64,000 nucleotides of DNA from assembly GCF_023055435.1 (NCBI RefSeq), contig NW_025963802.1, forward strand, positions 558,001 through 622,000. Reading direction: 5' to 3'. The number at the start of each line of letters is the position of its first letter. Position 1 is the first letter of the stretch. The position numbers and the translations under genes were made by a program. This document shows, piece after piece, positions 44,222 to 64,000 of the stretch. Under the pieces are notes generated by a model. It made no database searches, had not been told where the DNA came from, and saw nothing but the letters and a program-made list of their open reading frames with translations. This stretch comes from Haliotis rufescens (Eukaryota).

Positions 44222-44834
44222 TCAATAATAGCCGATACCTGAAACAAAAAAATAGTAGAATAAAGTTGGGATATATGGATAAGTCACAACGAAGTCTTGA
44301 AACTAGCTGCATGATAAGCTAAACCAAATATTAGAGAAAGCAGAGAATAATTTTAAAGATGTTTTGTAAATGGCATCAGCTTTGTCGCGTAAAATAATAA
44401 TACCACATAGGTAAATTATATAATTTTGCAAACGAGACTGAAGGTGGGATACGATAAACAAATGATATCATATTTTGTGAAATACCTTTTCCCAATCCCA
44501 TTCCGTATCCTCCAATTCCGCCGTAGAGACCACCATAGCCTCCAAGTCCTCCGTACAGACCTCCCATGCCTCCGTATAGACCTCCCACGCCTCCGTATAG
44601 ACCTCCCATGCCTCCGTATAGACCTCCCACGCCTCCGTATAGACCTCCCATGCCTCCGTACAGACCTCCATAGCCTCCGTACAGACCTCCAAGGCCTCCG
44701 TACAATCCACCCATTCCGTAGCCAATTCCGCCCAGTCCTCCTTTCAACCCGCCAATTCCACCATACAGACCAGTAGGCTCGGCAAAGGCGGTAACAGCCA
44801 GGCAGGCAACAAGAGCGGCGACTATCTTCATCAT
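44222..44834 (-). CDS. Secreted Gly/Tyr-rich protein, copy 10 (join 44486..44834, 44222..44238; 121 aa)
   Basis: Intact structure; TATA at 45200-45209. Confidence 0.88.
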
Positions 44835-47800
44835 TTTGAGTATCTATTGAGTAACGTGAAAATCGTTGTCAAGAAAGGTAAATAGCATGTTATCGTTACT
44901 CATCTGGTAAATTCAGTTCACACCACTCATTGTGAATTATGTTATCAGTTTTACTTTCACCTGCATTCATAGATTTCCCAATTTACAAGAACGTTTTATG
45001 TTACATATTCGTACTTTTATGAATTGGCTCATCATAAAGATTGAAAACAGCCAGATGCGCAGCAGATGAATCAAACATTAAAATTGTACATATATATCAC
45101 AAGCAAACCTTAAAATAGTACTTACAGTTTGGTCTTGACTCGTATCTGTGTCTTAACGGCAGGTGAAGATAAGAGATGATGGAACAGTTTCCCCCATCCT
45201 TTATATATACCATTTGTGAATTATACGTGATTAATTTACCTTGGGCTGGCCACTTCCAGGTAAGTGACGCACCTCAGTTTAATGGTGTAAAGTAAGCATT
45301 CTTTTCGCATCAAAGGGCCCGAGGTTATCACCCTACGGGTACACATGCGAGCTGGTATACATGAACATCGATTAAGGAAGTACAAGACAACGTATATAAA
45401 GGTGGCAAACAGACACACTCTCTCTGGCATCGTCTAACTGCATTTCAAACAGTCCTCGATTCTCAACGTTTAACCTATATCAAGTAAATATTCGATAACG
45501 GTCTGAAAAGTGTGTATCCAGTAAATATATGATGTGGGAGCAACATACATCAGACATTATAATGCATCTGTGTGATACGACATAACAAGAGACCAGAAAA
45601 CTGACGCAACACACTAGTACAGCCTTACCACAGTACAGCAGTAGCACTGTACCACACGGGGTCAACTATGCTAACCGTTTCCGTGTAATACAGCAGCCTG
45701 CTCACAAGAAAATAGCTTCTGCTGAATATACTGCAGAAGTCCCCAGATACTGCATATTCTCCCCGAATTTTATTTATCTTACTGCACAATAACAATAAAC
45801 TACAACAGCTTTATTTCCTAACTGATAGGTACATATATTGGTTTATTCTCACAAAGGGACTGTCACTATGAATACTCACAACACCTTTTTATGCGTGTAA
45901 TATCTGTTAAAAGCCTAAAGTACACCAATGTCTTCTGAAAACATGATTGACATATGAACAACAGCTTGTTTTCTCGTCTTTGTTGACTTGTCTTTGTATG
46001 TGTTTGTGACGGAGGAACCGTTGGGGCAGGATACGCTTACTTTTTGGCAACCGCCAGGTATCATCACTATCTGGTAGTCATTCATACGCACATGCGTGTG
46101 ATCATTAAAGTCGAAATCGTACAATGGTCTCTGCTTCGAGCAGAGGTTTCGAATGATTCTGAAAAGGGTTATGTGGCTTTTATTTGCAACTGCGTTTCTT
46201 GAGAGAAGTCTCTTATTTTCAACATATCATCTTGATAATTGTACACTTCATTATCAAGGCATTTGTAATAATACGAGCATCACTAAATTTGTTATCTCAA
46301 TTTCTATAGATAACGCCTGAATGTTGATATAATAATCATTCAATGATGACCCTTTAACTACATAAATCGTCAACGCCAGAAAATAATCAGGCTCCATTAT
46401 CTGCTGAAACAGATTTCATTGAGTGTAAAAGGCAAGGTTGTGCTAAAACATATGCTGGATATCAGTGATGTCATCAGGTGTTAATGAATAGTTTATATTT
46501 GTATATATTTGTTGGGTGTTTCATGAGCTCCTCCGTCAGTTACATCGTGTGCCAGATTAGGAGAATGTTGTCTTTTGACAATGTCTCAGCCATTCATACA
46601 TTTGCATATATACTTAATCACTGTTGCAAATAACTCACTTTAACGTGTTTTAATCTTGGGGTGAGTCTTTGGTTCTAAACATTAGAAGAAAGAAGAAAGT
46701 ATATAAATCGCCTCTACCCTTTACGTATGCCCTTGACATGATGAAGCAGTAGTGATAGTGATGACTGTGTTCTTTTAAGGCGTGTTTAAACCAAAACTCA
46801 TACCAAGAATAAAACATGCGCAAATCAGTAACTATGTAAGGGTTTCCCAGAACCGTACATCTAAAAGTAAAGACGTGTGTTTTCAGAAGAAAATGCTCTT
46901 AAAGTATAACACAAAGGTGTTTTCAAAGATAGACATGACCAAACGACTTGTTTTTACAGTCTGGTTGTTGTTATAAAAAGACTTATGACAAGCTTTAAAG
47001 TTGGACCATTTATTCCGCTGAATTTCACTCTCTACAGTTACCAAATGCAATCTCCTTTGTATTGATAAATGATTGTCACGTTTGCGATGTAATCAAACAC
47101 TAGGGATATATTAGCTATTTGTTTGTTTATTGTAATCTTCAATCCTACCAATCCAGTTCGGAATCTTAAAATTCGCTGTCTGATTTAATCAATATGTGTT
47201 TTACAAATAGCACCCACAGGGAAGGTGCTTAGTGAACACACAACTAAATATCTATATAGATACTTCTCCTATTAATTACATAAGCAGTATGCAAAATTTT
47301 AAATTGCATCATCAAATCAAGAAGTACATGTTTGATGGAAATTACAAATAATTCCTAGTTTGATAAGCTACACCCGGACAAGCGTATTTAATAGTTACTT
47401 TTGAATTCAATCGTTTTGTTTGTGTTATTAATAAACTGTCAAGATATGTTACTGTCATGGAAATTCCAACTGTATGCATTCCCTTCTAACCAAAGCAGTA
47501 AGAATCTTGCAACATTTGTTTTGATGCTCTACATCACCATGGCTTTCGCTGTTTCATTGCAGCAGCTCAGATATTATTTATACAAAGCGCCATAACAACA
47601 TGTAGATTGTATTCTGAATACAACTTTCGCTCATTTTCAAGGACAGCACACACATTTGCATTTCAATACAGTGCACACTGTCTACCCCTTGATCCCGTTA
47701 ATGAACGCTTTGACCAAAATTGATACTCCTGCTTATTTGTTTCGCTGCATGTTTTTAAAATGCAAATTGAAATACAGCCAGCCAATTCCAGATATTATGG

Positions 47801-48856: not shown

Positions 48857-50057
48857 TTTGAGTATCTATTGAGTAACGTGAAAATCATTGTCAAGAAAGG
48901 TAAATAGCATGTTATCGTTACTCATCTGGTAAATTCAGTTCACACCACTCATTATGAATTATGTTATCAGTTTTACTTTCACCTGCATTCATATATTTCC
49001 CAATTTACAAGAACGTTTTATGTTACATATTCGTACTTTTATGAATTGGCTCATCATAAAGATTGAAAACAGACAGATGCGCAGCAGATGAATCAAACAT
49101 TAAAAGTGTACATATATATCACAAGCAAACCTTAAAATAGTACTTACAGTTTGGTGTTTACACGTATCTGTGTCTCAACGGCAGGTGAAGATAAGAGATG
49201 ATGGAACAGTTTCCCCCATCCTTTATATATACCATTTGTGAATTATACGTGATTTATTTACCTTGGGCTGGCCACTTCCAGGTAAGTAACGCACCTCCGC
49301 TTATTTGTGTAAAGTAAGCATTCTTTTCGCATCGAAGGGCCCGAGGTTATCACCCTACGGGTACACATGCGAGCTGGTATACATGAACATCGATTAAGGA
49401 AGTACAAGACAACGTATATAAAGGTGGCAAACAGACACACTCTTTCTGGCATCGTCTAACCGCATTTCAAACAGTCCTCGATACTCAACGTTTAACCTAT
49501 ATTAAGTAAATATTGGATAACGGTCTGAAAAGTGTGTATCCAGTGAATATATGATGTAGGAGCAACATACATCAGACATTATAATGCATCTGTGTGATAA
49601 GACATAACAAGAGACCAGAAAACTGACGCAACACACTAGTACAGCCTCACCACAGTACAGCAGTAGCACTGTACCACACGGGGTCAACTATGCTAACCGT
49701 TTCCGTGTAATACAGCAGCCTGCTCACAAGAAAATAGCTTCTACTGAATATACTGCAGAAGTCCCCAGATACTACATTATTCTCCCCGAATTTTATTTAT
49801 CTTACTGCACAATAACAATAAACTACAACAGCTTTGTTTGCTAACTGATAGGTACATATATTGGTTTCTTCTCACAAAGGAACTCTCACTGTGAATACTC
49901 ACAACACCATTTTATGCGTGTAGTATCTGTTAAAAGCCTAAAGTACACCAATGTCTTCTGAAAACATGATTGACATATGAACAACCGCTTGTTTTCTCGT
50001 CTTTGTTGACTTGTCTGTGTATGTGATTGTGACGGTGGAACCGTTGGGGCAGGATAC

Positions 50058-50140
50058 CAGTAGTAAGTACAGACCACAAAATAATTTTTATCAGCAGAAG
50101 AAATACCTTTCTTCTGCTGACGTCACTTCCTGTTGGTGCA
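50058..50140 (+). repeat. Split direct repeat A1 (left terminus, 83 bp)
   Basis: Matches 53735-53817 with 7 mismatches. Confidence 0.92.
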
Positions 50141-50167
50141 ACGTCGCCAGCGAGTCGACCTACGGAA

Positions 50168-50776
50168 TTGAATGCCCAAAATGGCGGACATGCCCCCCTA
50201 GGTGCGTCGAGTTCACCGAGTTCCGGTTTTAGCAACGCTGAAGTCGCCACCGGCACAACACGACAGCATGCGACGAGTGCAGTTGATGTGCAGTCTGAAT
50301 TTCAAGTAATCAAGGACAGTTATCAACGTGTCAAGCTAGCTGCCGATCACAAACTGCAGGTTTCTCGCGGAGGAATAAAACACTAGGACAAAACAACCGA
50401 TTCTATTATAGCAAAGTGTGCGCGGTATTTTGAAACAGGTTTGGAAATATTGCAAAGCATTGAGTCAAATGACAGTGAGAATATTCAGGAACTTTATTTT
50501 GTACTGTTAGCTAATATTCGTTATCTACAAGATGGATATGCTGCTCTTTTAGTTAGTGGTGCTGTTATTCCTGAAACCGCACGATTGTTCAGAACATTTA
50601 GAAGAAATACCTCTGGTTTTACTCCAGACGCAATAAACGACCTGAGAAACGCTGCAGCCGTAGCTTCAGTATCAGTACAGCAAGATGACTTTAACTTTCG
50701 ACAAGCACATTCTTCAAAAGACGTGTACACGGGTCGAAACATCCCTAACACTAGCGATAATGAAGGGGGACAATAA
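50168..50776 (+). pseudogene. ORF1 (putative gag) of the YR retrotransposon, with a premature TAG at 50384-50386
   Basis: ORFs 50168-50386 and 50441-50776 are in the same frame, separated by one stop codon. The gag call rests on position upstream of pol. Confidence 0.65.
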
Positions 50777-50779
50777 ATA

Positions 50780-52567
50780 TCGAAAGACATTGCAACAAAT
50801 TCCAGTTATAAAATGGGTTTATGGTGGCCTAAAAATACCATTTACTAAAGAACCACAAATTCAGTAATAAACAATATCAATTTGTGACAAGTGAAATTCG
50901 GGCATTGTTCTGTTCGGGAGCAATTGAAATATGCAGTCGAAAACCAAAATGTGTATCGCCTATAAAAAGGGGGAAAAATTACGATTGATACATGATTTAC
51001 GGGAGCTGAACAGTGCATGTTTAAAACAGGGATACCAATGTGAGGACATTAGAACGGTTAGACAGTGTGTTAAAACAGGTGATAGTTTAGTTACACTTGA
51101 CATTAAAAACGGATTTCATCATATACCCATACACCAAGATGACAGAGATTATCTTTGGTTTCAGTGGCAAAATACATTTTATCGATGGAAGGTTCTCCCA
51201 TTTGGTTTATCAATAGCTCCGTACTATTTTTGTAAAATACTCAAACCAGTTGTTACGTATCTGCGATCTCATGGTCCATGAGAGTTGTGTGTTATGTAGA
51301 TGACATTCTACTTATGAGTACTCCTGCACATAACGTATCACAAAACAAACAATTAGTGAACACTCTTTCAAAGCTTGGGTTTTTTATCAATTGGGATAAG
51401 TCTGACTTAGAGCCAAGCAACACCAAGTCTTATTTGGGTTACATAGTGTGCACAGACGGAGAATTCGCTCAGTTGAGAATCCCATCATCACTGGTAAGGA
51501 AACTGAAAAAAGACATAAGGCGTGGTCTTGCTTTACCTAGGATTGAGGCCAGAGTGTTGGCTCGCATCTCTGGTCAATGTGTATCAATGTTCCGGGCTAT
51601 TGTCCCAGGGAAACTAATGGTCAGAAGTACATACAGACTTCTTAGTAGAAAAAATAGTTGGGACGATAAATTGACACTAGATTCGCCAGCTAATGAGGAT
51701 ATGTTGTGGTGGTTTACTGCTCTTGATAACTGGAATGGACAAAGCATAATTATTCGACAACCTGAAGTGCAAATAGTTACAGACGCAAGTTCGACAGGTT
51801 ACGGCGCGGTATGCAACGGGAAACAGGCAGCAGGATTTTGGCCTCCACAAATAAGCAGTCTTCACTCAAACAACAAAGAGATGTTAGCCATTCTCATGGC
51901 GTTGCACACCTTTGGTCCAAGTTTAAAAGGAAAAGTTGTGAAGATACTGTCCGACAACATATCTGCAGTATGCTACATAAATCAACTGGGAGGTCCAAGT
52001 CTGCCCCTGACAAATATCATGAAATCAATATGGATCGTGCCTCACAAGTATGGCCTTCATATTCAAGCAGGCTTCCTGGCTGGATGCAAGAATGTAGAAG
52101 CAGATGCTCTCAATCGTCTCCCAGACCTATACGAGTGGCAACTGAATCCAGCCCTATTTCAATACATAGACAGACTGTGGGGAACCCACTCAGTAGACCG
52201 GTTTGCGACCATGTCAAATACTCAGCTGGGAACATACAACAGTCGATTTTGGGACCCGGGCAGTTCAGGGGTGGACGCTTTGTCTAGAGCAAACTGGGGG
52301 ATTCACAACAACTTTGTGAATCCGCCCTTCCGTCTATTACCAGAGGTCATAGACAAGGTCATCCAGGAAAAAGCAATCGCGACTATCATAGCACCTGCGT
52401 GGAGAAACAGACCGTGGTTTCACAAACTGAGAACGATATTGACCTGTTCCCCAATTCGAATTCCAAAGATCTCCTGGACAATTCTAAGTTCAACGAGCAA
52501 GGTGGAACCTTTGGAATATCACAAATGGCGCCTATACGCCTGGAGAGTGTGTGGAGATGGAATCTAG
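50780..52567 (+). pseudogene. pol: reverse transcriptase, RNase H and Dam-like N6-adenine methyltransferase (frameshifted)
   Basis: RT motifs LRLIHDLRELN, LDIKNGFHHIPI, LPFGLSIAPYYF, YVDD, YLG; RNase H motifs TDASSTGYGA, SNNKEMLAI, SDN, NVEADALNR; MT motifs DRFA, NSRFWDPG, GVDAL, FVNPPF, APAW..RPWF. Frameshift at ~51280. Start position is approximate. Confidence 0.92.
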
Positions 52568-53590
52568 AAAAAAAGGTTGGTTAGACAGGGCCATAAGTCA
52601 ACTACAACTTTGTCTGGCACCAAGCACTCTTAAAGTGTACAACGGAGCTATTCAGAAACTACAACAATTTTGTCATGATAATGAACGGTCATTTCCGAGA
52701 TGTGATGAAATAACTATAGTTGACTTTTTGTGCTCAATAGCTGATAGTTCATCTAGACCATTATCTCAAATAAAGACAACAGTCGCTGCTCACTCACTTG
52801 TTCGAATGTGCGAACGAGGAGTCAGTTTTGGACAATTACGAAGTCAATATGATGATCAAAGCATTGATTAAATCTAATACTCTACAACCCCGTAAACGGT
52901 CAAAGATCATGCCTGTGGACCCATTTATCAATTTATTTCGTCAATGGCCAAATAATCTGCATCTACAGCTTAAATTGTTAAGGTTAAAGATTATTGTATT
53001 GTTGTCTTTAACATTAATGTTGAGACCCTCGGACATAACCCCTAAAGTCGTTGTGTTTGATCCCAATGACAATGTGAAAAAAGCAGTGGTATTTTCATCT
53101 GATGATGTACTTTTCCATGATGATGATAGCGCAACCATATGGTTGCATGGTATAAAGAATGACACTGACAGGTCAGGTTTCGAGGTACATCCCCCACCAG
53201 GATCAGAGAGAAAAGTTAACCCAGTTGAAGCTCTTAAAGTGTACATAGAACGGACAAATGGTGTTAGGCCCAAACAGGATATGCCAGTATTTCTAACACT
53301 GCAACGACCTTACAAGGCAATAACTGCTGCTACAGTCGGTTCGATTCTAAACGAAGCAATCAGATTAGCAGGTTTAGGTGGATTTTATACAGCTAAATCT
53401 TTTTAGGCCGACGGGGGCGACTAAGGCTATAGACACGGGGTTTGAACCAGATACAATTATGCGCATGGGTCGTTGGAAGACAAGATCAGTGTTCTTTGAC
53501 TACTATGTACACAGTAAAACCCCTGCCTCTTACACAACTGATGTTTTGACAAAATTAGATTTATTGTTTGCATTTATGATGTTTCGATGA
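52551..53590 (+). pseudogene. Tyrosine recombinase (frameshifted, three fragments)
   Basis: LAPSTLKVY (N-terminal domain), LRPSD (catalytic R), GIKND (K), AKSF-RPTGAT (second R), MGRWKT (W), VFFDYY (Y). Confidence 0.9.
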
Positions 53591-53678
53591 TATCTATTAC
53601 ATAAAACGTTAATTTCCTATATACATTTTGCAGAATGCATGCATTTTCTGTTAAATATCTTGTAGTAGCTCTCTATTT

Positions 53679-53734
53679 AGGCTATAACTATTATTTTAGT
53701 TTCGTGGTGTGTTGATAACGTAGGTTTCGGTAAA
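53679..53734 (+). repeat. Split direct repeat B1 (56 bp), directly abutting A2
   Basis: Matches 53891-53946 with 3 mismatches. Confidence 0.92.
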
Positions 53735-53817
53735 CAGAAGTTAGTACACACCACAAAATAATAATTATCAGCAGAAGAAATACGTTTCTTCTGCTGGCGT
53801 CACTTCCTGTTGGTGCA
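53735..53817 (+). repeat. Split direct repeat A2 (83 bp)
   Basis: Internal copy of the left terminus A1. Confidence 0.92.
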
Positions 53818-53890
53818 TTTTCTTCTATTTCTTTTGATTATATAATGTAAAGTTTATAGACTTTCTGGTGACGTTGTATTACGGGAATAA

Positions 53891-53946
53891 AGGCTATAAC
53901 TATCATTTTAGTTTTGTGGTGTGTTGATAACGTAGGTTTCAGTAAA
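53891..53946 (+). repeat. Split direct repeat B2 (right terminus, 56 bp)
   Basis: Ends ...TTTCAGTAAA; host sequence resumes with GCTTAC at 53947. Confidence 0.92.
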
Positions 53947-54627
53947 GCTTACATTTTGGCAACCGCCAGGTATCATCACTATCTGGTAGTCATTCATACG
54001 CACATGCTTGTGATCATTATAGTCGGAATCGTACAATGGTCGCTGCTTCGAGCAGAGGTTTCGAATGATTCTGAAAAGGGTTTTGTGGCTTTTATTTGCA
54101 ACTGCGTTCCTTGAGAGAACTCTCTTATTTTCAACATATCGTCTTGATAATTGTACACTTCATTATCAATGCATTTGTGATAATACGAGCATCACTAAAT
54201 TTGTTATCTCAATTTCTATAGATAACGCCTGAATATTGATATAATAATCATTCAATGATGACCCTTTAACTACATAAATCGTCAACACCAGAGAATAATG
54301 AGGCTACATTATCTGCTGAAACAGATTTCATTGGGCGTAAAAGGCAAGATTGTGCTGAAACATATACTGAATATCAGTGATGTCACCAGGTGTTAGTGAA
54401 TAGTTTTATATTTATATATATTTGTTGGATGTTTCATGAGCTCCTCCGTCCGTTCCATCGTGTGCCAAATTGGGAGAATGTTGTCTTTTGACAATCACTT
54501 GACAAAATATCATCCATTCCAAACAATCCAAAACTTGGAAATACCACCATTCCAAATGGAAATATGACCATTCCAAAATTTGTCAAGGTCATATTTCCAA
54601 GCTTGGATTTTTTGGGATTTGTTTGGA

Positions 54628-55061
54628 TTTGTTTGGATATGTTTGGATACAACATGTCATAATCATATCTGTTAAACGTTGTACAACTTTTGACCTTATG
54701 TGAGATTAGTAATGACATGAAAGTAAATAATTAAGAGTATTTTGGCACTATTTACCACGAAAAGACCAAATCATGAGCAAATATAACTAAAAGAATTTCT
54801 GTCATTTAAAGTGGCTACTCTTTATATTTAATTTCTGATCCTCCTTGTCTATAATCATATGACATTGACTATGAACTTTGAACACTTAAACAAATATTTT
54901 GTTTGGATATGTTTGGATACAACATGTCATAATCATATGTTAAACGTTGTACAACTTTTGACCTTATGCGAGATTAGTAATGACATGAAAGTAAATAATT
55001 AAGAGTATTTTGGCACTATTTACAACGAAAAGACCAAATCATGAGCAAATGTAACTAAAAG
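54628..55061. repeat. ~165-bp direct repeat pair (54628-54793 and 54898-55061), 270-bp offset
   Basis: TTTGTTTGGATATGTTTGGATACAACATGTC...GAGCAAAT(A/G)TAACTAAAAG occurs twice with few differences; the second copy runs straight into the satellite. Confidence 0.9.
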
Positions 55062-58000
55062 TGTGAAGTGGGACAGAAGTGATGTGTGAAGTGGGAGAGA
55101 AGTGATGTGTGAAGTTGGCCCGATGTGCTGGTGAAGACCAGAAGTCATGTGTGAAGTTGGACAGAAGTGATGTGTGAAGTGGGACAGACGTGATGTGTGA
55201 AGTGGGACAGAAGTGATGTGTGAACTGGGACAGACGTGATGTGTGAACTGGGACAGACGTGATGTGTGAAGTGGGAAAGAAGTGAAGTGTGAAGTGGGAC
55301 AGAAGTGAAGTGTGAAGTGGGACAGAAGTGATGTGTGAAGTGGGACAGAAGTGATGTGTGAAGTGGGACAGAAGTGTTGTGTGAAATGGGACAGAATTGA
55401 TGTGTGAACTGGGACAGACGTGATGTGTGAAGTGGGACAGAAGTGATGTGTGAAGACCAGAAGTGATGTGTGAACTGGGACAGACGTGATGTGTGAAGAC
55501 CAGAAGTGATGTGTGAAGTGGGACAAAAGTGTTGTGTGAAGTGGGCCCGATGTGCTTGTGAAGACCAGAAGTGATGTGTGAAGTGGGACAGAAGTGATGT
55601 GTGAAGTGGGACAGAAGTGATGTGTGAAGTGGGACAGAATTGATGTGTGAAGTGGGACAGAAGTGATGTGTGAAGTAGGACAGAAGTGATGTGTGAAGTG
55701 GGACAGAAGTGATGTGTGAAGTGGGACAGAATTGATGTGTGAAGTGGGACAGAAGTGATGTGTGAAGTGGGACAGAATTGATGTGTGAAGTGGGACAGAA
55801 GTGATGTGTGAAGTGGGACAGAAGTGATGTGTGAAGTGGGACAGAATTGATGTGTGAAGTGGGACAGAAGTGATGTGTGAAGTAGGACAGAAGTGATGTG
55901 TGAAGTGGGACAGAAGTGATGTGTGAAGTGGGACAGAATTGATGTGTGAAGTGGGACAGAAGTGATGTGTGAAGTGGGACAGAATTGATGTGTGAAGTGG
56001 GACAGAAGTGATGTGTGAAGTGGGACAGAAGTGATGTGTGAAGTGGGACAGAATTGATGTGTGAAGTGGGACAGAAGTGATGTGTGAAGTGGGACAGAAG
56101 TGATGTGTGAAGTGGGACAGAAGTGATGTGTGAACTGGGACAGACGTGATGTGTGAAGTGGGACAGAAGTGTTGTGTGAAGTGGGACAGAAGTGATGTGT
56201 GACAGAAGGGTTGTGTGATGTGGGACAGAAGTGATGTGTGAAGTGGGACAGAAATGTTGTGTGAAGTGGGACAGAAGTGTTGTGTGAAGTGGGACAGAAG
56301 TGATGTGTGAAGTGGGACAGAAGTGTTGTGTGAAGTGGGACAGAAGTGTTGTGTGAAGTGGGACAGAAGTGATGTGTGACAGAAGTGATGTGTGAACTGG
56401 GACAGACGTCATGTGTGAAGACCAGAAGTGATGTGTGAAGTGGGACAGAAGTGATGTGTGAAGTGGGCCCGATGTGATGTGTGAAGACCAGAAGTGATGT
56501 GTGAAGTGGGACAGACGTGATGTGTGAAGACCAGAAGTGATGTGTGAAGTGGGACAGAAGTGATGTGTCAAGTGGGACAGAAGTGAAGTGGGACAGAAGG
56601 GTTGTGTGATGTGGGACAGAAGTGATGTGTGAAGTGGGACAGAAATGTTGTGTGAAGTGGGGCAGAAGTGAAGTGGGACAGAAGTGTTGTGTGAAGTGGG
56701 GCAGAAGTGATGTGTGAAGTGGGACAGAAGTGATGTGTGAAGTGGGACAGAAGTGATGTGCGAAGTGGCTCAGAAGTGATGTGTGAAGTGGGACAGAAGT
56801 GATGTGTGACAGAAGGGTTGTGTGATGTGGGACAGAAGTGATGTGTGAAGTGGGACAGAAATGTTGTGTGAAGTGGGACAGAAGTGTTGTGTGAAGTGGG
56901 ACAGAAGTGAAGTGTGAAGTGGGACAGAAGTGTTGTGTGAAGTGGGACAGAAGTGTTGTGTGAAGTGGGACAGAAGTGATGTGTGAAGTGGGACAGAAGT
57001 GATGTGTGACAGAAGTGATGTGTGAACTGGGACAGACGTCATGTGTGAAGACCAGAAGTGATGTGTGAAGTGGGACAGAAGTGATGTGTGAAGTGGGCCC
57101 GATGTGATGTGTGAAGACCAGAAGTGATGTGTGAAGTGGGACAGACGTGATGTGTGAAGACCAGAAGTGATCTGTGAAGTGGGACAGAAGTGATGTGTCA
57201 AGTGGGACAGAAGTGAAGTGGGACAGAAGGGTTGTGTGATGTGGGACAGAAGTGATGTGTGAAGTGGGACAGAAATGTTGTGTGAAGTGGGGCAGAAGTG
57301 AAGTGGGACAGAAGTGTTGTGTGAAGTGGGGCAGAAGTGATGTGTGAAGTGGGACAGAAGTGTTGTGTGAAGTGGGACAGAAGTGATGTGTGAAGTGGGA
57401 CAGAAGTGATGTGCGAAGTGGCTCAGAAGTGATGTGTGAAGTGGGACAGAAGTGATGTGTGAAGTGGGACAGATGTGTTGTGTGAAGTGGGACAGAAGTG
57501 ATGTGTGAAGTAGGACAGAAGTGATGTGTGAAGTGGGACAGAAGCGATGTGTGAAGTGGGACAGAAGTTTTGTGTGAAGTGGGACAGAAGTGATGTGTGA
57601 AGTGGGACAGAAGTGATGTGTGAAGTGGGACGGAAATGTTGTGTGAAGACCAGAAGTGTTGTGTGAAGACCAGAAAAGATGTGTCAAGTGGGACAGAAGT
57701 GATGTGTGAAGTGGGAGAGAAGTGTTGTGTGAAGTGGGACAGAAAGGATGTGTGAAGTGGGACAGAAGTGATGTGTGAAGTGGGACAGAAGTGATGTGTG
57801 AAGTGGGACAGAAGTGATGTGTCAAGTGGGACAGAAGTGTTGTGTGAAGTGGGACAGAAAGGATGTGTGAAGTGGGACAGAAGTGTTGTGTGAAGTGGGA
57901 CAGAAGTGATGTGTGAAGTGGGACAGAAGTGATGTGTGAAGTGGGACAGAAGTGAAGTGGGACAGAAGTGATGTATGAAGTGGGACAGAAGTGTTGTGTG

Positions 58001-61000
58001 AAGTGGGACAGAAGTGAAGTGGGACAGAAGTGATGTGTGAAGTTGGACAGAAGTGATGTGTGATGTGGGACAGAAGTGTTGTGTGAAGTGGGACAGAAGT
58101 GATGTGTGAAGACCAGAAGTGATGGGTGAAGTGGGACAGAAGTGATGGGTGAAGTGGGACAGACGTGATGTGTGAAGTGGGACAGAAGTGTTGTGTGAAG
58201 TGGGACAGAAGTGATGTGTGAAGTGGGACAGAAGTGATGTGTGAAGTGGGACAGAAGTGTTGTGTGAAGTGGGCCCGATGTGCTTGTGAAGACCAGAAGT
58301 GATGTGTGAAGTGGGACAGAAGTGATGTGTGAAGTGGGACAGACGTGATGTGTGAAGTGGGACAGAAGTGATGTGTGAAGTGGGAGAGAAGTGTTGTGTG
58401 AAGTGGGCCCGATGTGCTGGTGAAGACCAGAAGTGATGTGTGAAGTGGGACAGAAGTGATGTGTGAAGTGGGACAGACGTGATGTGTGAAGTGGGAGAGA
58501 AGTGATGTGTGAAGTGGGACAGAAGTGTTGTGTGAAGTGGGCCCAATGTGCTGGTGAAGACCAGAAGTGATGTGTGAAGTGGAACAGAAGTGAAGTGTGA
58601 AGTGGGACAGAAGTGATGTGTGAAGTGGGACAGAAGTGTTGTGTGAAGTGGGACAGAAGTGTTGTGTGAAGTGGGACAGAAGTGTTGTGTGAACTGGGAC
58701 AGAAGTGATGTGTGAAGACCAGAAGTGATGTGTGAAGTGGGACAGAAGTGATGTGTGAAGTGGGACAGAAGTGTTGTGTGAAGTGGGCCCGATGTGCTTG
58801 TGAAGACCAGAAGTGATGTGTGAAGTGGGACAGAAGTGATGTGTGAAGTGGGACAGAAGTGATGTGTGAAGTGGGACAGAAGTGATGTGTGAAGTGGGAC
58901 AGAAGTGTTGTGTGAAGTGGGACAGAAGTGATGTGTGAAGTGGGACAGAAGTGATGTGTGAAGTGGGACAGACGTGATGTGTGAAGTGGGACAGAAGTGA
59001 TGTGTGAACTGGGACAGACGTGATGTGTGAACTGGGACAGACGTGATGTGTGAAGTGGGAAAGAAGTGAAGTGTGAAGTGGGACAGAAGTGAAGTGTGAA
59101 GTGGGACAGAAGTGATGTGTGAAGTGGGACAGAAGTGATGTGTGAAGTGGGACAGAAGTGTTGTGTGAAATGGGACAGAATTGATGTGTGAACTGGGACA
59201 GACGTGATGTGTGAAGTGGGACAGAAGTGATGTGTGAAGACCAGAAGTGATGTGTGAACTGGGACAGACGTGATGTGTGAAGACCAGAAGTGATGTGTGA
59301 AGTGGGACAAAAGTGTTGTGTGAAGTGGGCCCGATGTGCTTGTGAAGACCAGAAGTGATGTGTGAAGTGGGACAGAAGTGATGTGTGAAGTGGGACAGAA
59401 GTGATGTGTGAAGTGGGACAGAATTGATGTGTGAAGTGGGACAGAAGTGATGTGTGAAGTAGGACAGAAGTGATGTGTGAAGTGGGACAGAAGTGATGTG
59501 TGAAGTGGGACAGAATTGATGTGTGAAGTGGGACAGAAGTGATGTGTGAAGTGGGACAGAATTGATGTGTGAAGTGGGACAGAAGTGATGTGTGAAGTGG
59601 GACAGAAGTGATGTGTGAAGTGGGACAGAATTGATGTGTGAAGTGGGACAGAAGTGATGTGTGAAGTAGGACAGAAGTGATGTGTGAAGTGGGACAGAAG
59701 TGATGTGTGAAGTGGGACAGAATTGATGTGTGAAGTGGGACAGAAGTGATGTGTGAAGTGGGACAGAATTGATGTGTGAAGTGGGACAGAAGTGATGTGT
59801 GAAGTGGGACAGAATTGATGTGTGAAGTGGGACAGAATTGATGTGTGAAGTGGGACAGAAGTGATGTGTGAAGTGGGACAGAAGTGATGTGTGAAGTGGG
59901 ACAGAAGTGATGTGTGAACTGGGACAGACGTGATGTGTGAAGTGGGACAGAAGTGTTGTGTGAAGTGGGACAGAAGTGATGTGTGACAGAAGGGTTGTGT
60001 GATGTGGGACAGAAGTGATGTGTGAAGTGGGACAGAAATGTTGTGTGAAGTGGGACAGAAGTGTTGTGTGAAGTGGGACAGAAGTGATGTGTGAAGTGGG
60101 ACAGAAGTGTTGTGTGAAGTGGGACAGAAGTGTTGTGTGAAGTGGGACAGAAGTGATGTGTGACAGAAGTGATGTGTGAACTGGGACAGACGTCATGTGT
60201 GAAGACCAGAAGTGATGTGTGAAGTGGGACAGAAGTGATGTGTGAAGTGGGCCCGATGTGATGTGTGAAGACCAGAAGTGATGTGTGAAGTGGGACAGAC
60301 GTGATGTGTGAAGACCAGAAGTGATGTGTGAAGTGGGACAGAAGTGATGTGTCAAGTGGGACAGAAGTGAAGTGGGACAGAAGGGTTGTGTGATGTGGGA
60401 CAGAAGTGATGTGTGAAGTGGGACAGAAATGTTGTGTGAAGTGGGGCAGAAGTGAAGTGGGACAGAAGTGTTGTGTGAAGTGGGGCAGAAGTGATGTGTG
60501 AAGTGGGACAGAAGTGATGTGTGAAGTGGGACAGAAGTGATGTGCGAAGTGGCTCAGAAGTGATGTGTGAAGTGGGACAGAAGTGATGTGTGACAGAAGG
60601 GTTGTGTGATGTGGGACAGAAGTGATGTGTGAAGTGGGACAGAAATGTTGTGTGAAGTGGGACAGAAGTGTTGTGTGAAGTGGGACAGAAGTGAAGTGTG
60701 AAGTGGGACAGAAGTGTTGTGTGAAGTGGGACAGAAGTGTTGTGTGAAGTGGGACAGAAGTGATGTGTGAAGTGGGACAGAAGTGATGTGTGACAGAAGT
60801 GATGTGTGAACTGGGACAGACGTCATGTGTGAAGACCAGAAGTGATGTGTGAAGTGGGACAGAAGTGATGTGTGAAGTGGGCCCGATGTGATGTGTGAAG
60901 ACCAGAAGTGATGTGTGAAGTGGGACAGACGTGATGTGTGAAGACCAGAAGTGATCTGTGAAGTGGGACAGAAGTGATGTGTCAAGTGGGACAGAAGTGA

Positions 61001-64000
61001 AGTGGGACAGAAGGGTTGTGTGATGTGGGACAGAAGTGATGTGTGAAGTGGGACAGAAATGTTGTGTGAAGTGGGGCAGAAGTGAAGTGGGACAGAAGTG
61101 TTGTGTGAAGTGGGGCAGAAGTGATGTGTGAAGTGGGACAGAAGTGTTGTGTGAAGTGGGACAGAAGTGATGTGTGAAGTGGGACAGAAGTGATGTGCGA
61201 AGTGGCTCAGAAGTGATGTGTGAAGTGGGACAGAAGTGATGTGTGAAGTGGGACAGATGTGTTGTGTGAAGTGGGACAGAAGTGATGTGTGAAGTAGGAC
61301 AGAAGTGATGTGTGAAGTGGGACAGAAGCGATGTGTGAAGTGGGACAGAAGTTTTGTGTGAAGTGGGACAGAAGTGATGTGTGAAGTGGGACAGAAGTGA
61401 TGTGTGAAGTGGGACGGAAATGTTGTGTGAAGACCAGAAGTGTTGTGTGAAGACCAGAAAAGATGTGTCAAGTGGGACAGAAGTGATGTGTGAAGTGGGA
61501 GAGAAGTGTTGTGTGAAGTGGGACAGAAAGGATGTGTGAAGTGGGACAGAAGTGATGTGTGAAGTGGGACAGAAGTGATGTGTGAAGTGGGACAGAAGTG
61601 ATGTGTCAAGTGGGACAGAAGTGTTGTGTGAAGTGGGACAGAAAGGATGTGTGAAGTGGGACAGAAGTGTTGTGTGAAGTGGGACAGAAGTGATGTGTGA
61701 AGTGGGACAGAAGTGATGTGTGAAGTGGGACAGAAGTGAAGTGGGACAGAAGTGATGTATGAAGTGGGACAGAAGTGTTGTGTGAAGTGGGACAGAAGTG
61801 AAGTGGGACAGAAGTGATGTGTGAAGTTGGACAGAAGTGATGTGTGATGTGGGACAGAAGTGTTGTGTGAAGTGGGACAGAAGTGATGTGTGAAGACCAG
61901 AAGTGATGTGTGAAGTGGGACAGAAGTGATGGGTGAAGTGGGACAGACGTGATGTGTGAAGTGGGACAGAAGTGTTGTGTGAAGTGGGACAGAAGTGATG
62001 TGTGAAGTGGGACAGAAGTGATGTGTGAAGTGGGACAGAAGTGTTGTGTGAAGTGGGCCCGATGTGCTTGTGAAGACCAGAAGTGATGTGTGAAGTGGGA
62101 CAGAAGTGATGTGTGAAGTGGGACAGACGTGATGTGTGAAGTGGGACAGAAGTGATGTGTGAAGTGGGAGAGAAGTGTTGTGTGAAGTGGGCCCGATGTG
62201 CTGGTGAAGACCAGAAGTGATGTGTGAAGTGGGACAGAAGTGATGTGTGAAGTGGGACAGACGTGATGTGTGAAGTGGGAGAGAAGTGATGTGTGAAGTG
62301 GGACAGAAGTGTTGTGTGAAGTGGGCCCAATGTGCTGGTGAAGACCAGAAGTGATGTGTGAAGTGGAACAGAAGTGAAGTGTGAAGTGGGACAGAAGTGA
62401 TGTGTGAAGTGGGACAGAAGTGTTGTGTGAAGTGGGACAGAAGTGTTGTGTGAAGTGGGACAGAAGTGTTGTGTGAACTGGGACAGAAGTGATGTGTGAA
62501 GACCAGAAGTGATGTGTGAAGTGGGACAGAAGTGATGTGTGAAGTGGGACAGAAGTGTTGTGTGAAGTGGGCCCGATGTGCTTGTGAAGACCAGAAGTGA
62601 TGTGTGAAGTGGGACAGAAGTGATGTGTGAAGTGGGACAGAAGTGATGTGTGAAGTGGGACAGAAGTGATGTGTGAAGTGGGACAGAAGTGTTGTGTGAA
62701 GTGGGACAGAAGTGATGTGTGAAGTGGGACAGAAGTGATGTGTGAAGTGGGACAGACGTGATGTGTGAAGTGGGACAGAAGTGATGTGTGAACTGGGACA
62801 GACGTGATGTGTGAACTGGGACAGACGTGATGTGTGAAGTGGGAAAGAAGTGAAGTGTGAAGTGGGACAGAAGTGAAGTGTGAAGTGGGACAGAAGTGAT
62901 GTGTGAAGTGGGACAGAAGTGATGTGTGAAGTGGGACAGAAGTGTTGTGTGAAATGGGACAGAATTGATGTGTGAACTGGGACAGACGTGATGTGTGAAG
63001 TGGGACAGAAGTGATGTGTGAAGACCAGAAGTGATGTGTGAACTGGGACAGACGTGATGTGTGAAGACCAGAAGTGATGTGTGAAGTGGGACAAAAGTGT
63101 TGTGTGAAGTGGGCCCGATGTGCTTGTGAAGACCAGAAGTGATGTGTGAAGTGGGACAGAAGTGATGTGTGAAGTGGGACAGAAGTGATGTGTGAAGTGG
63201 GACAGAATTGATGTGTGAAGTGGGACAGAAGTGATGTGTGAAGTAGGACAGAAGTGATGTGTGAAGTGGGACAGAAGTGATGTGTGAAGTGGGACAGAAT
63301 TGATGTGTGAAGTGGGACAGAAGTGATGTGTGAAGTGGGACAGAATTGATGTGTGAAGTGGGACAGAAGTGATGTGTGAAGTGGGACATAAGTGATGTGT
63401 GAAGTGGGACAGAATTGATGTGTGAAGTGGGACAGAAGTGATGTGTGAAGTAGGACAGAAGTGATGTGTGAAGTGGGACAGAAGTGATGTGTGAAGTGGG
63501 ACAGAATTGATGTGTGAAGTGGGACAGAAGTGATGTGTGAAGTGGGACAGAAGTGATGTGTGAAGTGGGACAGAATTGATGTGTGAAGTGGGACAGAAGT
63601 GTTGTGTGAAGTGGGACAGAAGTGATGTGTGACAGAAGTGATGTGTGAACTGGGACAGACGTCATGTGTGAAGACCAGAAGTGATGTGTGAAGTGGGACA
63701 GAAGTGATGTGTGAAGTGGGCCCGATGTGATGTGTGAAGACCAGAAGTGATGTGTGAAGTGGGACAGACGTGATGTGTGAAGACCAGAAGTGATGTGTGA
63801 AGTGGGACAGAAGTGATGTGTCAAGTGGGACAGAAGTGAAGTGGGACAGAAGGGTTGTGTGATGTGGGACAGAAGTGATGTGTGAAGTGGGACAGAAATG
63901 TTGTGTGAAGTGGGGCAGAAGTGAAGTGGGACAGAAGTGTTGAGTGAAGTGGGGCAGAAGTGATGTGTGAAGTGGGACAGAAGTGATGTGTGAAGTGGGA
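55061..64000. repeat. 23-bp satellite (GAAGTGGGACAGAAGTGATGTGT)n with a 3,784-bp higher-order repeat; runs off the right edge
   Basis: Monomer = GAAGTGGGACA + GAAGTGATGTGT. Variant patterns recur at a 3,784-bp offset (ORF-track pairs 56770/60554, 59310/63094, 56571/60355). Confidence 0.97.

What the first reader, a model, noticed from the sequence alone, without database searches (positions are those of the whole stretch)
50058..53946. Structurally complete PAT-like tyrosine-recombinase retrotransposon with exact ends defined by 11 empty paralogous sites
Seen: the order is A1(83 bp)-ORF1-RT-RH-MT-YR-B1(56 bp)-A2-spacer-B2. The internal B1|A2 join (GGTAAA|CAGAAG) reproduces the join expected on circularising the right and left ends (AGTAAA|CAGTAG). 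Insertion into GGATAC|GCTTAC adds or removes no host bases, and I see no shared trinucleotide between target and circle junction. Known: DIRS1-like elements have inverted termini plus an internal complementary region, while PAT and Ngaro elements have split direct repeats. The Dam-like MT domain (NPPF motif) is characteristic of the DIRS1/PAT lineage rather than Ngaro. Inference: a compact (~3.9 kb) PAT-like family, possibly uncatalogued in this host, with an unusually well-resolved integration site.
Basis: partly seen in the sequence, partly recalled or inferred. Interest (0 to 1): 0.75.

Follow-up and report, generated by a model that had tools for sequence, protein, structure and literature searches.

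The report
Decayed PAT-like tyrosine-recombinase retrotransposon copy
This is an old, broken and internally shortened copy of a known kind of jumping gene (a PAT-like, DIRS-order retrotransposon) that landed cleanly in the last unit of a gene array, so its exact ends can be read; it is ordinary as a class, but its insertion site is unusually well resolved.

Summary
Window 50058-53946 is bounded by split direct repeats: A1, interior, B1|A2, a 73-bp spacer, B2. It sits in GGATAC|GCTTAC with no base gained or lost, and 11 empty paralogous sites confirm this. The domain order is ORF1, RT, RNase H, Dam-like MT, Cre-like tyrosine recombinase.

It is not structurally complete. Other genomic copies hold three more interior segments (164, about 75 and about 439 bp). 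These carry the ORF1 start, an RG-rich box and the pol start. Full length is about 4.57 kb, not 3.9 kb, and pol and YR are also frame-broken.

The family is small: about 10 copies with interior and at least 13 complete solo A-spacer-B units.

Family-wide, targets do resemble the circle junction. The left flank has A at -2 in 18 of 21 and at -1 in 16 of 21; the right flank starts with C in 12 of 21. The window copy is an exception.

Relatives from metagenomes (45-58% pol identity) share the architecture. They also share a dyad-symmetric B|A junction motif and a hairpin in A.

By structure it is PAT-like, not DIRS1-like or Ngaro. Named references and Repbase/Dfam could not be consulted. Verdict: a new member of a known kind. 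A word look-up of earlier scan findings returned nothing.

The parts
50058..53946 (+). Whole inserted element: a decayed, internally deleted PAT-like retrotransposon copy of 3,889 bp
   Evidence: Boundaries come from 11 empty paralogous sites. There are 68 matches elsewhere in the genome.
50046..50057 (+). Left half of the host target (ends ...GGATAC)
53947..53959 (+). Right half of the host target (starts GCTTAC...)
50058..50140 (+). A1, the 5' terminal direct repeat (83 bp)
   Evidence: family D1, 92% identical to A2
50092..50119 (+). 12-bp-stem hairpin or palindrome inside A1 (the same feature in A2 at 53769-53796)
   Evidence: I1; z -4.7 and -3.95. Intact in 15 of 21 A copies. Lineage-specific equivalents occur in relatives.
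50118..50125 (+). TGACGTCA octamer directly after the hairpin. It is a candidate promoter element by inference only.
   Evidence: Present in 17 of 21 A copies. That it is a CRE-type site is recalled, not tested.
50165..50776 (+). ORF1 (Gag-like) remnant. Its start is missing, it has an internal stop at 50384-50386, and it lacks an RG-rich block of 25 codons.
   Evidence: ORF1 relatives are found in 30 of 36 clade loci.
50164..50165 (+). Point where other copies hold about 164 more bases, including the ORF1 start codon
   Evidence: present in 4 of 4 other copies spanning this point.
50686..50687 (+). Point where other copies hold about 75 more bases (the RG-rich box)
   Evidence: present in 5 of 5 other copies. 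One public-run contig also lacks the segment.
50811..50815 (+). Point (5-base overlap AAATG) where other copies hold about 415-439 more bases: the inter-ORF region plus the first 32 pol codons
   Evidence: present in 4 of 4 other copies.
50805..52567 (+). pol remnant. The RT N-terminal part lies in one frame with 4 stops (50805-51275). A 429-codon open stretch follows (51278-52567) holding the RT C-terminal part, RNase H (about 51764-51967) and the MT domain (about 52136-52423).
   Evidence: The best solved relative of the family profile is Ty3 RT, 5.5e-33.
52319..52330 (+). NPPF motif of the Dam-like methyltransferase domain
   Evidence: Read. N545 and P547 are invariant columns in A3.
52551..53590 (+). 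Tyrosine recombinase remnant in three frames (52569-52790, 52789-53403, 53402-53548). A stop at 53404-53406 sits where the conserved KxxR arginine falls.
   Evidence: The fold of a sister copy's YR matches Cre at 8.4e-10.
53679..53734 (+). B1, the internal copy of the 3' terminal repeat (56 bp)
   Evidence: family D2
53735..53817 (+). A2, the internal copy of the 5' terminal repeat
   Evidence: family D1
53716..53743 (+). Dyad-symmetric core of the B1|A2 junction, which equals the circle junction. Its form is TRACGTARGTTT, N4, AAAYWGTAGTYA, and the B|A boundary lies after AAA.
   Evidence: 18 invariant columns across 8 sequences from 7 lineages. One R/Y pair covaries 4:4.
53681..53772 (+). Extended imperfect palindrome centred on the junction
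   Evidence: Folded as single-stranded DNA: -20.5 kcal/mol, z -7.2. A sister copy has 14-nt exact inverted arms, reached by 0 of 1000 shuffles.
53818..53890 (+). Unique spacer between A2 and B2 (73 bp)
   Evidence: Relatives L077, L079 and L089 have spacers of 69, 88 and 143 bp.
53886..53891 (+). AATAAA across the spacer/B2 edge. It is a candidate poly(A) signal by inference only.
   Evidence: Present in 15 of 19 B2 or solo copies and 0 of 3 B1 copies.
53891..53946 (+). B2, the 3' terminal direct repeat
   Evidence: family D2
46023..46047 (+). Nearest of the 11 empty paralogous sites. The others start at 5853, 9755, 13789, 17823, 21858, 25871, 29906, 33919, 37954 and 41989.

Best explanation
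Window 50058-53946 is an old, non-autonomous remnant of a low-copy PAT-like retrotransposon. It belongs to the DIRS order and the split-direct-repeat type, with ORF1, RT-RNase H-Dam-like MT and a Cre-like tyrosine recombinase.

Shown:
- The element has exact ends CAGTAG...CAGTAAA.
- It was inserted without a target-site duplication into the last, diverged unit of a 4-kb tandem gene array.
- It later lost three interior segments and several reading frames.
- The same ends recur at 20 or more other loci, most of them 212-bp solo A-spacer-B units.
- Family targets resemble the B|A junction, (A/T)AA|C.

Inferred, following the standard model for this order:
- An RNA that starts in or after A1 and ends in B2 is reverse-transcribed. 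A promoter-like TGACGTCA lies in A, and AATAAA lies at the spacer/B2 edge.
- The missing end pieces are restored from the internal B1|A2 copy, giving a molecule whose ends meet as B|A.
- The recombinase exchanges strands between that junction and a target with short AA(A)C likeness. In this copy the exchange point is fixed at AAA|C, because the target had no such likeness.
- Solo units arise by recombination between A1 and A2.
For: - Repeats and junctions.
- Empty sites and precise insertion.
- Domains: RVT_1 to 2.8e-21; RT_RNaseH 1.3e-5, above its cut-off in a sister copy; Dam weak; Ty3 RT 5.5e-33; Phage_integrase in 7 of 10 YR relatives, best 1e-7; model pLDDT 80.4; Cre 8.4e-10.
- YR catalytic columns R, K, [K/R]xxR, W and Y are invariant or nearly so in 10 sequences.
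- Longer sister copies and the nature of the missing segments.
- Broken frames.
- Copy inventory.
- No target-site duplication in 15 of 16 two-ended insertions.
- Target bias: A at -2 in 18 of 21 (p 3e-7), A at -1 in 16 of 21 (p 3e-5), C at +1 in 12 of 21 (p 1e-4).
- The same A1...B1A2-spacer-B2 plan in relatives L077, L079 and L089.
- Clade placement away from the inverted-repeat relatives.
- Conserved junction dyad.
- Literature, passages read: PAT definition (PMC4157794, PMC3266345); junction trinucleotide shared with the target (PMC7192593, PMC3266345); solo AB repeats in Ngaro (PMC8547959).
Against: - No named PAT, DIRS1, Ngaro or VIPER sequence could be put on the tree, so membership rests on structure. 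PMC4157794 warns that these structural traits are homoplasious. In my tree, split-repeat elements lie on both sides of the inverted-repeat ones.
- ORF1 has no CCHC zinc finger, unlike Pat1 proper.
- In the window copy the Dam, RNase H and integrase Pfam matches are below their curated cut-offs. The YR profile found no solved structure by sequence.
- No circle-junction joint was seen in public-run contigs. The one small-RNA run laid nothing, so there is no evidence of activity or expression.
- The RNA ends, the promoter and the poly(A) site are inferred from motifs only.
- The tree was a quick search with SH-aLRT support only, and it carried long-branch warnings.
Confidence: 0.88

Rival explanations
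1. It is a DIRS1-like element in the strict sense, with inverted terminal repeats plus an internal complementary region.
For: It has the same RT-RH-MT and YR gene set, and the pol and YR ORFs overlap. The junction is self-complementary, as noted for DIRS-1 in PMC7192593 (passage).
Against: The termini are direct repeats (A1/A2 and B1/B2), not inverted ones. Only short subterminal arms are inverted. The three relatives with true inverted termini (L091, L094, L106) fall outside the window's 37-row clade.
Confidence: 0.03
2. It is an Ngaro-type element.
For: It has the A1-[ORFs]-B1A2B2 plan and solo AB units, as described for Ngaro in PMC8547959 (passage).
Against: Ngaro elements lack the MT domain (PMC4157794, PMC3266345, passages). 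Here the MT region with NPPF is present and conserved.
Confidence: 0.02
3. The insertion was not made by the recombinase on a junction-bearing intermediate. Instead a linear cDNA was captured at a chance break, or the element was moved in by array recombination or gene conversion.
For: The window target shares no AA(A)C core with the junction. DIRS-1 cDNA intermediates are reported as mostly linear and single-stranded, and circle junctions were not amplified (PMC7192593, passages).
Against: The ends are identical to the base in 21 5' ends and 21 3' ends at unrelated loci. No host base was lost or gained here. There is no target-site duplication in 15 of 16. The target bias mirrors the junction. 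End-joining would be expected to give ragged ends.
Confidence: 0.06
4. The 3.9-kb form is the family's normal spliced or compact version, and the longer copies carry introns or insertions.
For: There are three clean length differences. One public-run contig also lacks the 75-bp segment.
Against: - None of the three segments has GT...AG ends.
- They carry the ORF1 start codon, an in-frame RG-rich block and the pol start.
- The pol start aligns from residue 1 with a 629-aa relative.
- All other genomic copies spanning these points have the segments.
Confidence: 0.02

Closest known systems
PAT elements, especially the 'echinoderm-form' Pat1-like layout (SpPat1) as described in PMC4157794
   Same: It has RT-RH-MT plus a co-oriented YR. 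[quoted passage not shown] It is found in marine invertebrates; the nearest named YR relative is a Holothuria leucospilota protein at 51% identity.
   Different: ORF1 has no zinc finger. A unique spacer of 69-143 bp separates A2 from B2 in this clade. No comparison with SpPat1 or PAT sequences was possible.
DIRS1-like elements
   Same: The gene set is the same and pol and YR overlap. A short junction core is shared with targets: DIRS1-like junction trinucleotides listed in PMC3266345 include AAA and AAC. The junction is self-complementary.
   Different: Here the termini are split direct repeats, not inverted terminal repeats with an internal complementary region.
Ngaro elements
   Same: They share the A1-[ORFs]-B1A2B2 architecture and isolated solo AB repeats (PMC8547959).
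   Different: Ngaro elements have no MT domain. This family has one.
Cre/loxP, and integron IntI with folded attC sites (a working analogy only)
   Same: The YR model matches Cre best, and integron integrase also matches. The junction is a dyad with GTTT...AAAC arms, lineage-specific paired outer arms and a variable centre. The exchange point lies between A and C of AAAC. In attC sites only AAC and GTT are conserved, and cleavage is between C and the adjacent A (PMC2727003, passages).
   Different: This is a eukaryotic retroelement. No experiment shows which DNA form is recombined. The spacing between the half-sites varies from 4 to 22 nt, unlike loxP.

Membership tests
DIRS order (tyrosine-recombinase retrotransposons) | Reverse transcriptase of the Ty3-related type, plus RNase H | tested here: met
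   RVT_1 scores 8.7e-14 in the window and 2.8e-21 in a sister copy. RT_RNaseH scores 1.3e-5, above its cut-off, in a sister copy. The family profile finds Ty3 RT at 5.5e-33.
DIRS order (tyrosine-recombinase retrotransposons) | A tyrosine recombinase in place of an integrase | tested here: met
   The R, K, [K/R]xxR, W and Y columns are conserved. Phage_integrase matches 7 of 10 relatives. The model matches Cre at 8.4e-10. The window's own copy is frame-broken. A sequence search of solved structures found nothing.
DIRS order (tyrosine-recombinase retrotransposons) | Insertion without a target-site duplication | tested here: met
   The window copy against 11 empty sites. 15 of 16 two-ended insertions show none.
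PAT elements | A putative methyltransferase domain after RNase H | tested here: met
   The Dam Pfam match is weak: 0.0064 in the window, and 2.4e-5 at best in a relative, all below the cut-off. NPPF and the surrounding columns are invariant in 14 relatives.
PAT elements | Split direct repeats A1...B1A2...B2 | tested here: met
   The same arrangement is seen in sister copies.
PAT elements | RT or YR groups with named PAT references on a tree | not testable with these tools
   No tool returned named PAT, TOC, Kangaroo, DIRS1, Ngaro or VIPER sequences. The only substitute was a tree labelled by terminal-repeat type.
Pat1-like (strict sense) | [quoted passage not shown] | tested here: not met
   A sister copy's 270-aa ORF1 has 3 Cys and no CX2CX4HX4C. 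PMC4157794 notes that some members lack it.
DIRS1-like | Inverted terminal repeats plus an internal complementary region | tested here: not met
   One search shows direct terminal repeats and no terminal inverted pair.
Ngaro | Absence of the MT domain | tested here: not met
   The MT region is present.
Kangaroo / Daphnia 'novel' PAT forms | YR in inverted orientation | tested here: not met
   The YR is on the same strand as pol.

The most novel reading that the evidence does not exclude
The B|A junction of this widespread marine-invertebrate PAT-like clade may be recombined as a folded single-stranded hairpin. This would work like integron attC against a double-stranded target: one strand exchange between A and C of AAAC, then resolution by replication.

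This reading would fit four things:
- the compensatory, lineage-specific pairing around the junction;
- the variable 4-22-nt centre;
- the weak target requirement and the clean insertion into a non-homologous site seen in this window;
- the single-stranded cDNA intermediates reported for DIRS-1.

The conserved hairpin in A would be a second structure-based cis signal.
Probability: 0.2. Interest if true: 0.65.

Novelty: new member of a known kind. Interest (0 to 1): 0.3.

Why it matters
As a class this is ordinary: a dead copy of a known retrotransposon type.

Its value is as a clean natural record. Eleven empty paralogues show that a split-repeat YR retroelement can enter a site with no likeness to its junction, without adding or losing a base. 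That fixes one exchange point at AAA|C.

Set beside 20 other insertions and relatives from metagenomes, it points to three conserved non-coding signals: the junction dyad, the hairpin in A, and the spacer with AATAAA. These could guide experiments on how DIRS-order elements integrate, which is still unsettled (PMC7192593).

Tried and rejected
- **Introns.** I tested whether the three segments missing from the window copy are introns. None has GT...AG ends, and they hold start codons and in-frame coding sequence. Rejected.
- **Circle junction or tandem joints in public runs.** The only 'back' joint (53781 to 50108, depth 4) is explained by A1/A2 likeness. The joint that skips 3,889 bases in X14 is the paralogous empty site. 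These runs are Logan contigs, so absence proves nothing.
- **Small RNAs.** Run X23 laid 0 reads, so there is no test.
- **YR profile against solved structures by sequence.** Blank at E 0.01. The fold search then settled it.
- **Pfam on ORF1.** Only a weak BicD match. The Atlas gave unnamed mollusc-rich clusters and a 0.86 lead to LAP2alpha. This is a lead only.
- **Names for NCBI-sourced pol relatives.** None carried a name.
- **Earlier scan notes by words.** None found.
- **Repbase/Dfam and named reference elements.** Supplementary files of the papers were not opened.
- **Literature on the hairpin in A, the spacer and the junction dyad.** I did not search for these beyond, so I do not claim they are unpublished.
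- **Subsets given to calls.**
  - One search compared 10 of 30 loci.
  - Searches listed ORFs for 3 of about 9 other interior-bearing copies.
  - One search aligned 9 of 292 YR hits.
  - One search aligned 14 of 214 pol hits.
  - looked only at loci of 4 kb or more.
  - Searches used 76 of 80 metagenome loci. L104, L108, L110 and L111 had no open matching stretch of 250 aa and were left out.
  - One search dropped internal B1|A2 junctions, ends that did not start or end with the family's terminal letters, and duplicate flanks.
  - One search has 17 rows, one of which is a false pairing of two neighbouring units on C588.
Full report
**1. What is in the window**

Repeats and junctions
- The stretch 50058-53946 is bounded and organised by two pairs of direct repeats.
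  - A1 (50058-50140) and A2 (53735-53817) are 83 nt long and 92% identical.
  - B1 (53679-53734) and B2 (53891-53946) are 56 nt long and 95% identical.
- B1 abuts A2, and 73 unique bases separate A2 from B2.
- The internal join reads GGTAAA|CAGAAG. Joining the element's two ends would give AGTAAA|CAGTAG.

Empty sites
- A 25-base pattern for the expected empty site matches 11 times in the window at 3.9-4.0 kb spacing. Shuffles give 0.
- I aligned both junctions with three of the 11 sites. The host reads GGATAC|GCTTAC with nothing added or lost.
- The base on each side differs between element and host, so the boundaries carry no ambiguity.

Host context
- The window holds a tandem array of about 4,034-bp units.
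- Interior units are 98.8-99.2% alike.
- The unit that holds the element is 96.3-96.6% like the others over the left 1 kb. It is 94.2-95.4% like them over the right 549 bp.
- Array homology stops 549 bp to the right of the insertion.
- So the element sits in the last, truncated and diverged unit. It lies about 1.2 kb upstream of that unit's copy of a gene for a 152-aa Gly/Tyr-rich protein with a signal-peptide-like start.
- A 23-bp satellite fills 55061-64000.

**2. Genes**

Pfam on the open pieces of the window copy:

| Family | E-value | Against curated cut-off |
|---|---|---|
| RVT_1 | 8.7e-14 | above |
| RT_RNaseH | 7.2e-5 | just below |
| Dam | 0.0064 | below |
| Phage_int_SAM_1 | 0.043 | below |

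- Nothing was found for the two ORF1 pieces or the two C-terminal YR pieces.
- NPPF lies at 52319-52330.

Pol
- The 429-codon open stretch (51278-52564) has 214 relatives at E of 1e-5 or better among 4,199 candidates.
- The best is 55% identical. Most are proteins of about 620 aa on contigs of about 4-5 kb.
- A profile of 14 of them finds Ty3 reverse transcriptase first among solved structures, at 5.5e-33.

Recombinase
- I read the recombinase from a sister copy whose frame is open (L003, 345 aa).
- It has 292 relatives of about 340 aa.
- The named ones are a Holothuria leucospilota 'Tyr recombinase domain-containing protein' (51%) and an Amphibalanus amphitrite protein (42%).
- In an alignment with 9 of them, R169, K213, R296 of a [K/R]xxR box and W319 are invariant. 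The H328-Y329 pair is nearly invariant.
- Phage_integrase matches 7 of these 10 sequences, best 1e-7.
- A model with pLDDT 80.4 matches Cre recombinase first (8.4e-10). Xer, integron and lambda integrases follow.
- A sequence search of solved structures with the YR profile was blank.

ORF1
- ORF1 has no Pfam family apart from a weak BicD match.
- It has no CCHC zinc finger.
- An Atlas look-up gave unnamed clusters in which molluscs are the commonest taxon. It also gave a 0.86 lead to LAP2alpha. This is a lead only.

**3. The copy is not complete**

Inventory
- The window's own genome (1.33 Gb) gave 68 matches to the element.
- It gave 47 matches to its last 212 bases.
- About 10 loci hold interior sequence.
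- At least 13 loci are complete 212-bp A-spacer-B units flanked by unrelated DNA.
- These counts are lower bounds, as the tool states.

Missing segments

Every other copy that spans the relevant points holds extra DNA that the window copy lacks:

| Window position | Extra DNA in other copies | Copies holding it |
|---|---|---|
| 50164 | about 154-164 bp | 4 of 4 |
| 50686 | about 74-78 bp | 5 of 5 |
| 50811-50815 | about 415-439 bp | 4 of 4 |

- None of the three segments has intron-like ends.
- In L002 the segments carry three things:
  - the ORF1 start codon;
  - an in-frame RG-rich block of 25 residues;
  - the pol start, whose first residues align from residue 1 with a 629-aa relative.
- Full length is therefore about 4.57 kb.

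Other damage
- In the window copy, pol is read in two frames with 4 stops in the first part. The recombinase is read in three frames.
- A stop falls where the conserved arginine of the [K/R]xxR box lies.
- In the three other copies whose ORFs I listed (L002, L003, L004), at least one gene is interrupted or missing in each.

Relative age
- A1/A2 and B1/B2 in the window copy differ at 10 of 139 positions.
- In L002, A1 and A2 differ at 1 of 83.
- So the window copy is one of the older insertions. Its repeat divergence is of the same order as the divergence of its host unit from the rest of the array.

**4. Ends and targets across the family**

- Twenty-one independent 5' ends and 21 independent 3' ends carry the same terminal letters, CAGTAG... 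and ...CAGTAAA.
- I dropped internal junctions, duplicated flanks and truncated ends before counting.
- Among 16 independent insertions with both flanks, 15 show no duplicated host bases. One shows TAA.
- The flanks are not random:

| Position | Base count | p |
|---|---|---|
| -2 | A in 18 of 21 | 3e-7 |
| -1 | A in 16 of 21 | 3e-5 |
| -3 | A in 11, T in 8, of 21 | - |
| +1 | C in 12 of 21 | 1e-4 |

- The preferred target, (A/T)AA|C, therefore mirrors the junction TAAA|C.
- This is the trait described for the order. A short junction core is shared with the target and so appears at both ends (PMC7192593 and PMC3266345, passages). The latter lists AAA and AAC among DIRS1-like junction trinucleotides.
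- The window copy (TAC|G) is one of the few exceptions.
- Its target had no such core, so its two junctions show that the element-side break lies exactly between AAA and C.

**5. Relatives and classification**

Loci and terminal repeats
- A scan of metagenome contigs with the pol alignment confirmed 418 of 545 candidate stretches. The tool kept 80 loci.
- Self-comparison of the 76 loci with an open pol stretch gave these classes:

| Class | Loci |
|---|---|
| Full A1...B1A2...B2 plan | L077, L079, L089, L130, L133 |
| Exact end-overlap | L060, L061, L069, L072, L073, L100, L136 |
| Only the A pair | L070, L071, L076, L081 |
| True inverted termini | L091, L094, L106 |

- The spacers in L077, L079 and L089 are 69, 88 and 143 bp.
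- Exact end-overlap is expected when an assembler collapses A and B. It does not prove circles.
- Most of the remaining loci are cut short.

Tree
- I built a quick maximum-likelihood tree of 77 rows, with SH-aLRT support only and long-branch warnings.
- The window's pol pairs with L060 (support 98), inside a 37-row clade (support 99).
- That clade holds three of the five full split-repeat elements, six of the seven end-overlap contigs and all four A-only contigs. It holds none of the inverted-repeat ones.
- The inverted-repeat elements form other groups. A third group at 31-34% identity again holds split-repeat elements.
- So the two repeat types are interleaved, as PMC4157794 reports.

Gene order and limits
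- ORF1, pol and YR lie in that order on one strand. ORF1 relatives are found in 30 of 36 clade loci and in 0 of 44 loci outside the clade.
- By the published structural definition (an MT domain plus split direct repeats), the family is PAT-like and has the 'echinoderm-form' layout.
- It is not DIRS1-like, because it has no inverted termini. It is not Ngaro, because it has an MT domain.
- I could not place it against named references or check Repbase/Dfam.

**6. Non-coding signals (observations, with inferred roles)**

(a) The junction
- A motif of the form ACGTA[AG]G, then 8-30 bases, then [CT][AT]GTAG occurs in 6 of 36 clade loci. Many loci lack that region. It occurs in 0 of 44 loci outside the clade.
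- I aligned the window, a sister copy and those six loci. Eighteen columns are invariant. The form is TRACGTARGTTT, 4-22 bases, AAAYWGTAGTYA.
- The two halves are inverted.
  - The R and Y positions covary, with 4 A-T and 4 G-C pairs.
  - 82% of cells pair, against 37-50% when the partner is slid by 1-3 columns.
  - Nine pairs change on both sides.
  - I derived the structure from these same sequences, which favours it.
- The outer arms differ by lineage:

| Lineage | Exact arm | Shuffles reaching it (of 1000) |
|---|---|---|
| L002 | 14 nt | 0 |
| L072 | 9 nt | 13 |
| L077 | 7 nt | 170 |
| L068 | 7 nt | 179 |
| L060, L073, L079 | none notable | - |

- Folded as single-stranded DNA, 53679-53790 gives -20.5 kcal/mol, z -7.2.

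(b) A hairpin in A
- The window family has a 12-bp stem at 50092-50119 and at 53769-53796.
- Twenty-seven of 36 clade loci have at least one hairpin with a stem of 10 or more outside the coding part.
- The density is 39 in 63,394 nt outside coding, against 5 in 94,421 nt inside. Each lineage has its own letters.

(c) Possible transcription signals
- TGACGTCA follows the hairpin in 17 of 21 A copies.
- AATAAA spans the spacer/B2 edge in 15 of 19 B2 or solo copies. It is at the edge of 0 of 3 B1 copies.
- From this I infer a transcript that starts in or after A1 and ends in B2. Its missing ends could be restored from the internal B1|A2. Neither RNA end was observed.

**7. Public reads**

- Twenty runs in 8 studies hold part of the stretch, under three coded organism labels.
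- All informative runs are contig sets.
- The contigs show the paralogous empty site and the extra segments of longer copies.
- A set of contigs is about 99% identical to the window copy, closer than any copy in the assembly.
  - These contigs carry the 164-bp and 439-bp segments.
  - In one run they lack the 75-bp segment.
  - Whether this is an allele of this locus or an unassembled sister copy is open.
- No listed contig bridges host flank and element.
- No circle joint was seen.
- The small-RNA run laid nothing.

**8. Mechanism and verdict**

Shown:
- precise, duplication-free insertion with fixed ends;
- a junction-like target bias in the family;
- a Cre-like recombinase;
- solo units;
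- internal decay of this copy.

Inferred from the order's standard model (PMC7192593, PMC4157794, passages):
- reverse transcription of a sub-genomic RNA;
- restoration of its ends from B1|A2;
- recombinase-mediated exchange at the B|A junction;
- solo formation by A1 x A2 recombination, as proposed for Ngaro in PMC8547959.

A bolder reading
- The junction may act as a folded single strand, as integron attC sites do.
- In attC sites only AAC and GTT are conserved, cleavage is between C and the adjacent A, and resolution needs replication (PMC2727003, passages).
- The evidence here does not exclude this, and nothing here tests it.

Overall, this is a new member of a known kind.

Earlier scan notes on this same window proposed the junction arms as an att-like site and the element as a clock for the array. 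My bear on both.

Noticed in passing
window 1,800-54,495 (units of about 4,034 bp; the gene copy in one unit lies at 44376-44834, minus strand): A tandem array of 12 units. Each encodes a 152-aa protein with a signal-peptide-like start and GGLYGG-type repeats, built on a 21-bp minisatellite. Interior units are 98.8-99.2% alike. The last unit, which bears the element, is 94-96.6% like the others and is truncated 549 bp past the insertion.
   Followed up: partly
window 55061-64000: A 23-bp satellite of about 400 copies with 85% matches and a very strong GC skew (+0.74). It starts about 570 bp after the end of the array.
   Followed up: no
window 4-519: A 48-bp tandem repeat of 10.8 copies at the left edge of the window.
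   Followed up: no
window 50164, 50686, 50811-50815 (public-run contigs): Contigs in runs X1 and X2 are about 99% identical to the window copy. They carry two of its three missing segments, and one of them lacks the 75-bp segment. They may come from an allele of this locus or from a sister copy absent from the assembly.
   Followed up: partly
L060, L061, L069, L072, L073, L100, L136 (metagenome contigs): The contig ends overlap exactly by 99-987 bases, so the contigs look circular, with units of about 4.1-5.1 kb. Collapse of the A and B repeats by the assembler would give the same picture, so this is no proof of circular DNA.
   Followed up: partly
L130:4613-5879: In this distant split-repeat relative, the 1,267-bp 'spacer' between A2 and B2 translates to a recombinase-like stretch with HSLR...GRW motifs. 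The internal repeats therefore lie upstream of the YR, which is a different layout from the window's clade.
   Followed up: no
G000 C594:5858872, 5877765, 5886773 (L055-L057): Three truncated A fragments of 74-80 bp have identical left flanks and lie 9-19 kb apart. The fragment was evidently copied along with a larger segmental or tandem duplication.
   Followed up: no
L003 (G000 C112:8813749-8816674): This copy ends exactly at the end of B1 and is followed by host DNA, with no A2-spacer-B2. That is the product expected from B1 x B2 recombination or from integration of a one-junction form.
   Followed up: no
L002:210-1019 (ORF1 of a sister copy): The Atlas feature search places ORF1 nearest to unnamed clusters in which molluscs are the commonest taxon. 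A lower-ranked cluster (0.86) carries LAP2alpha, a domain said in a paper listing (PMC4495291, listing only) to derive from DIRS1-like elements.
   Followed up: no
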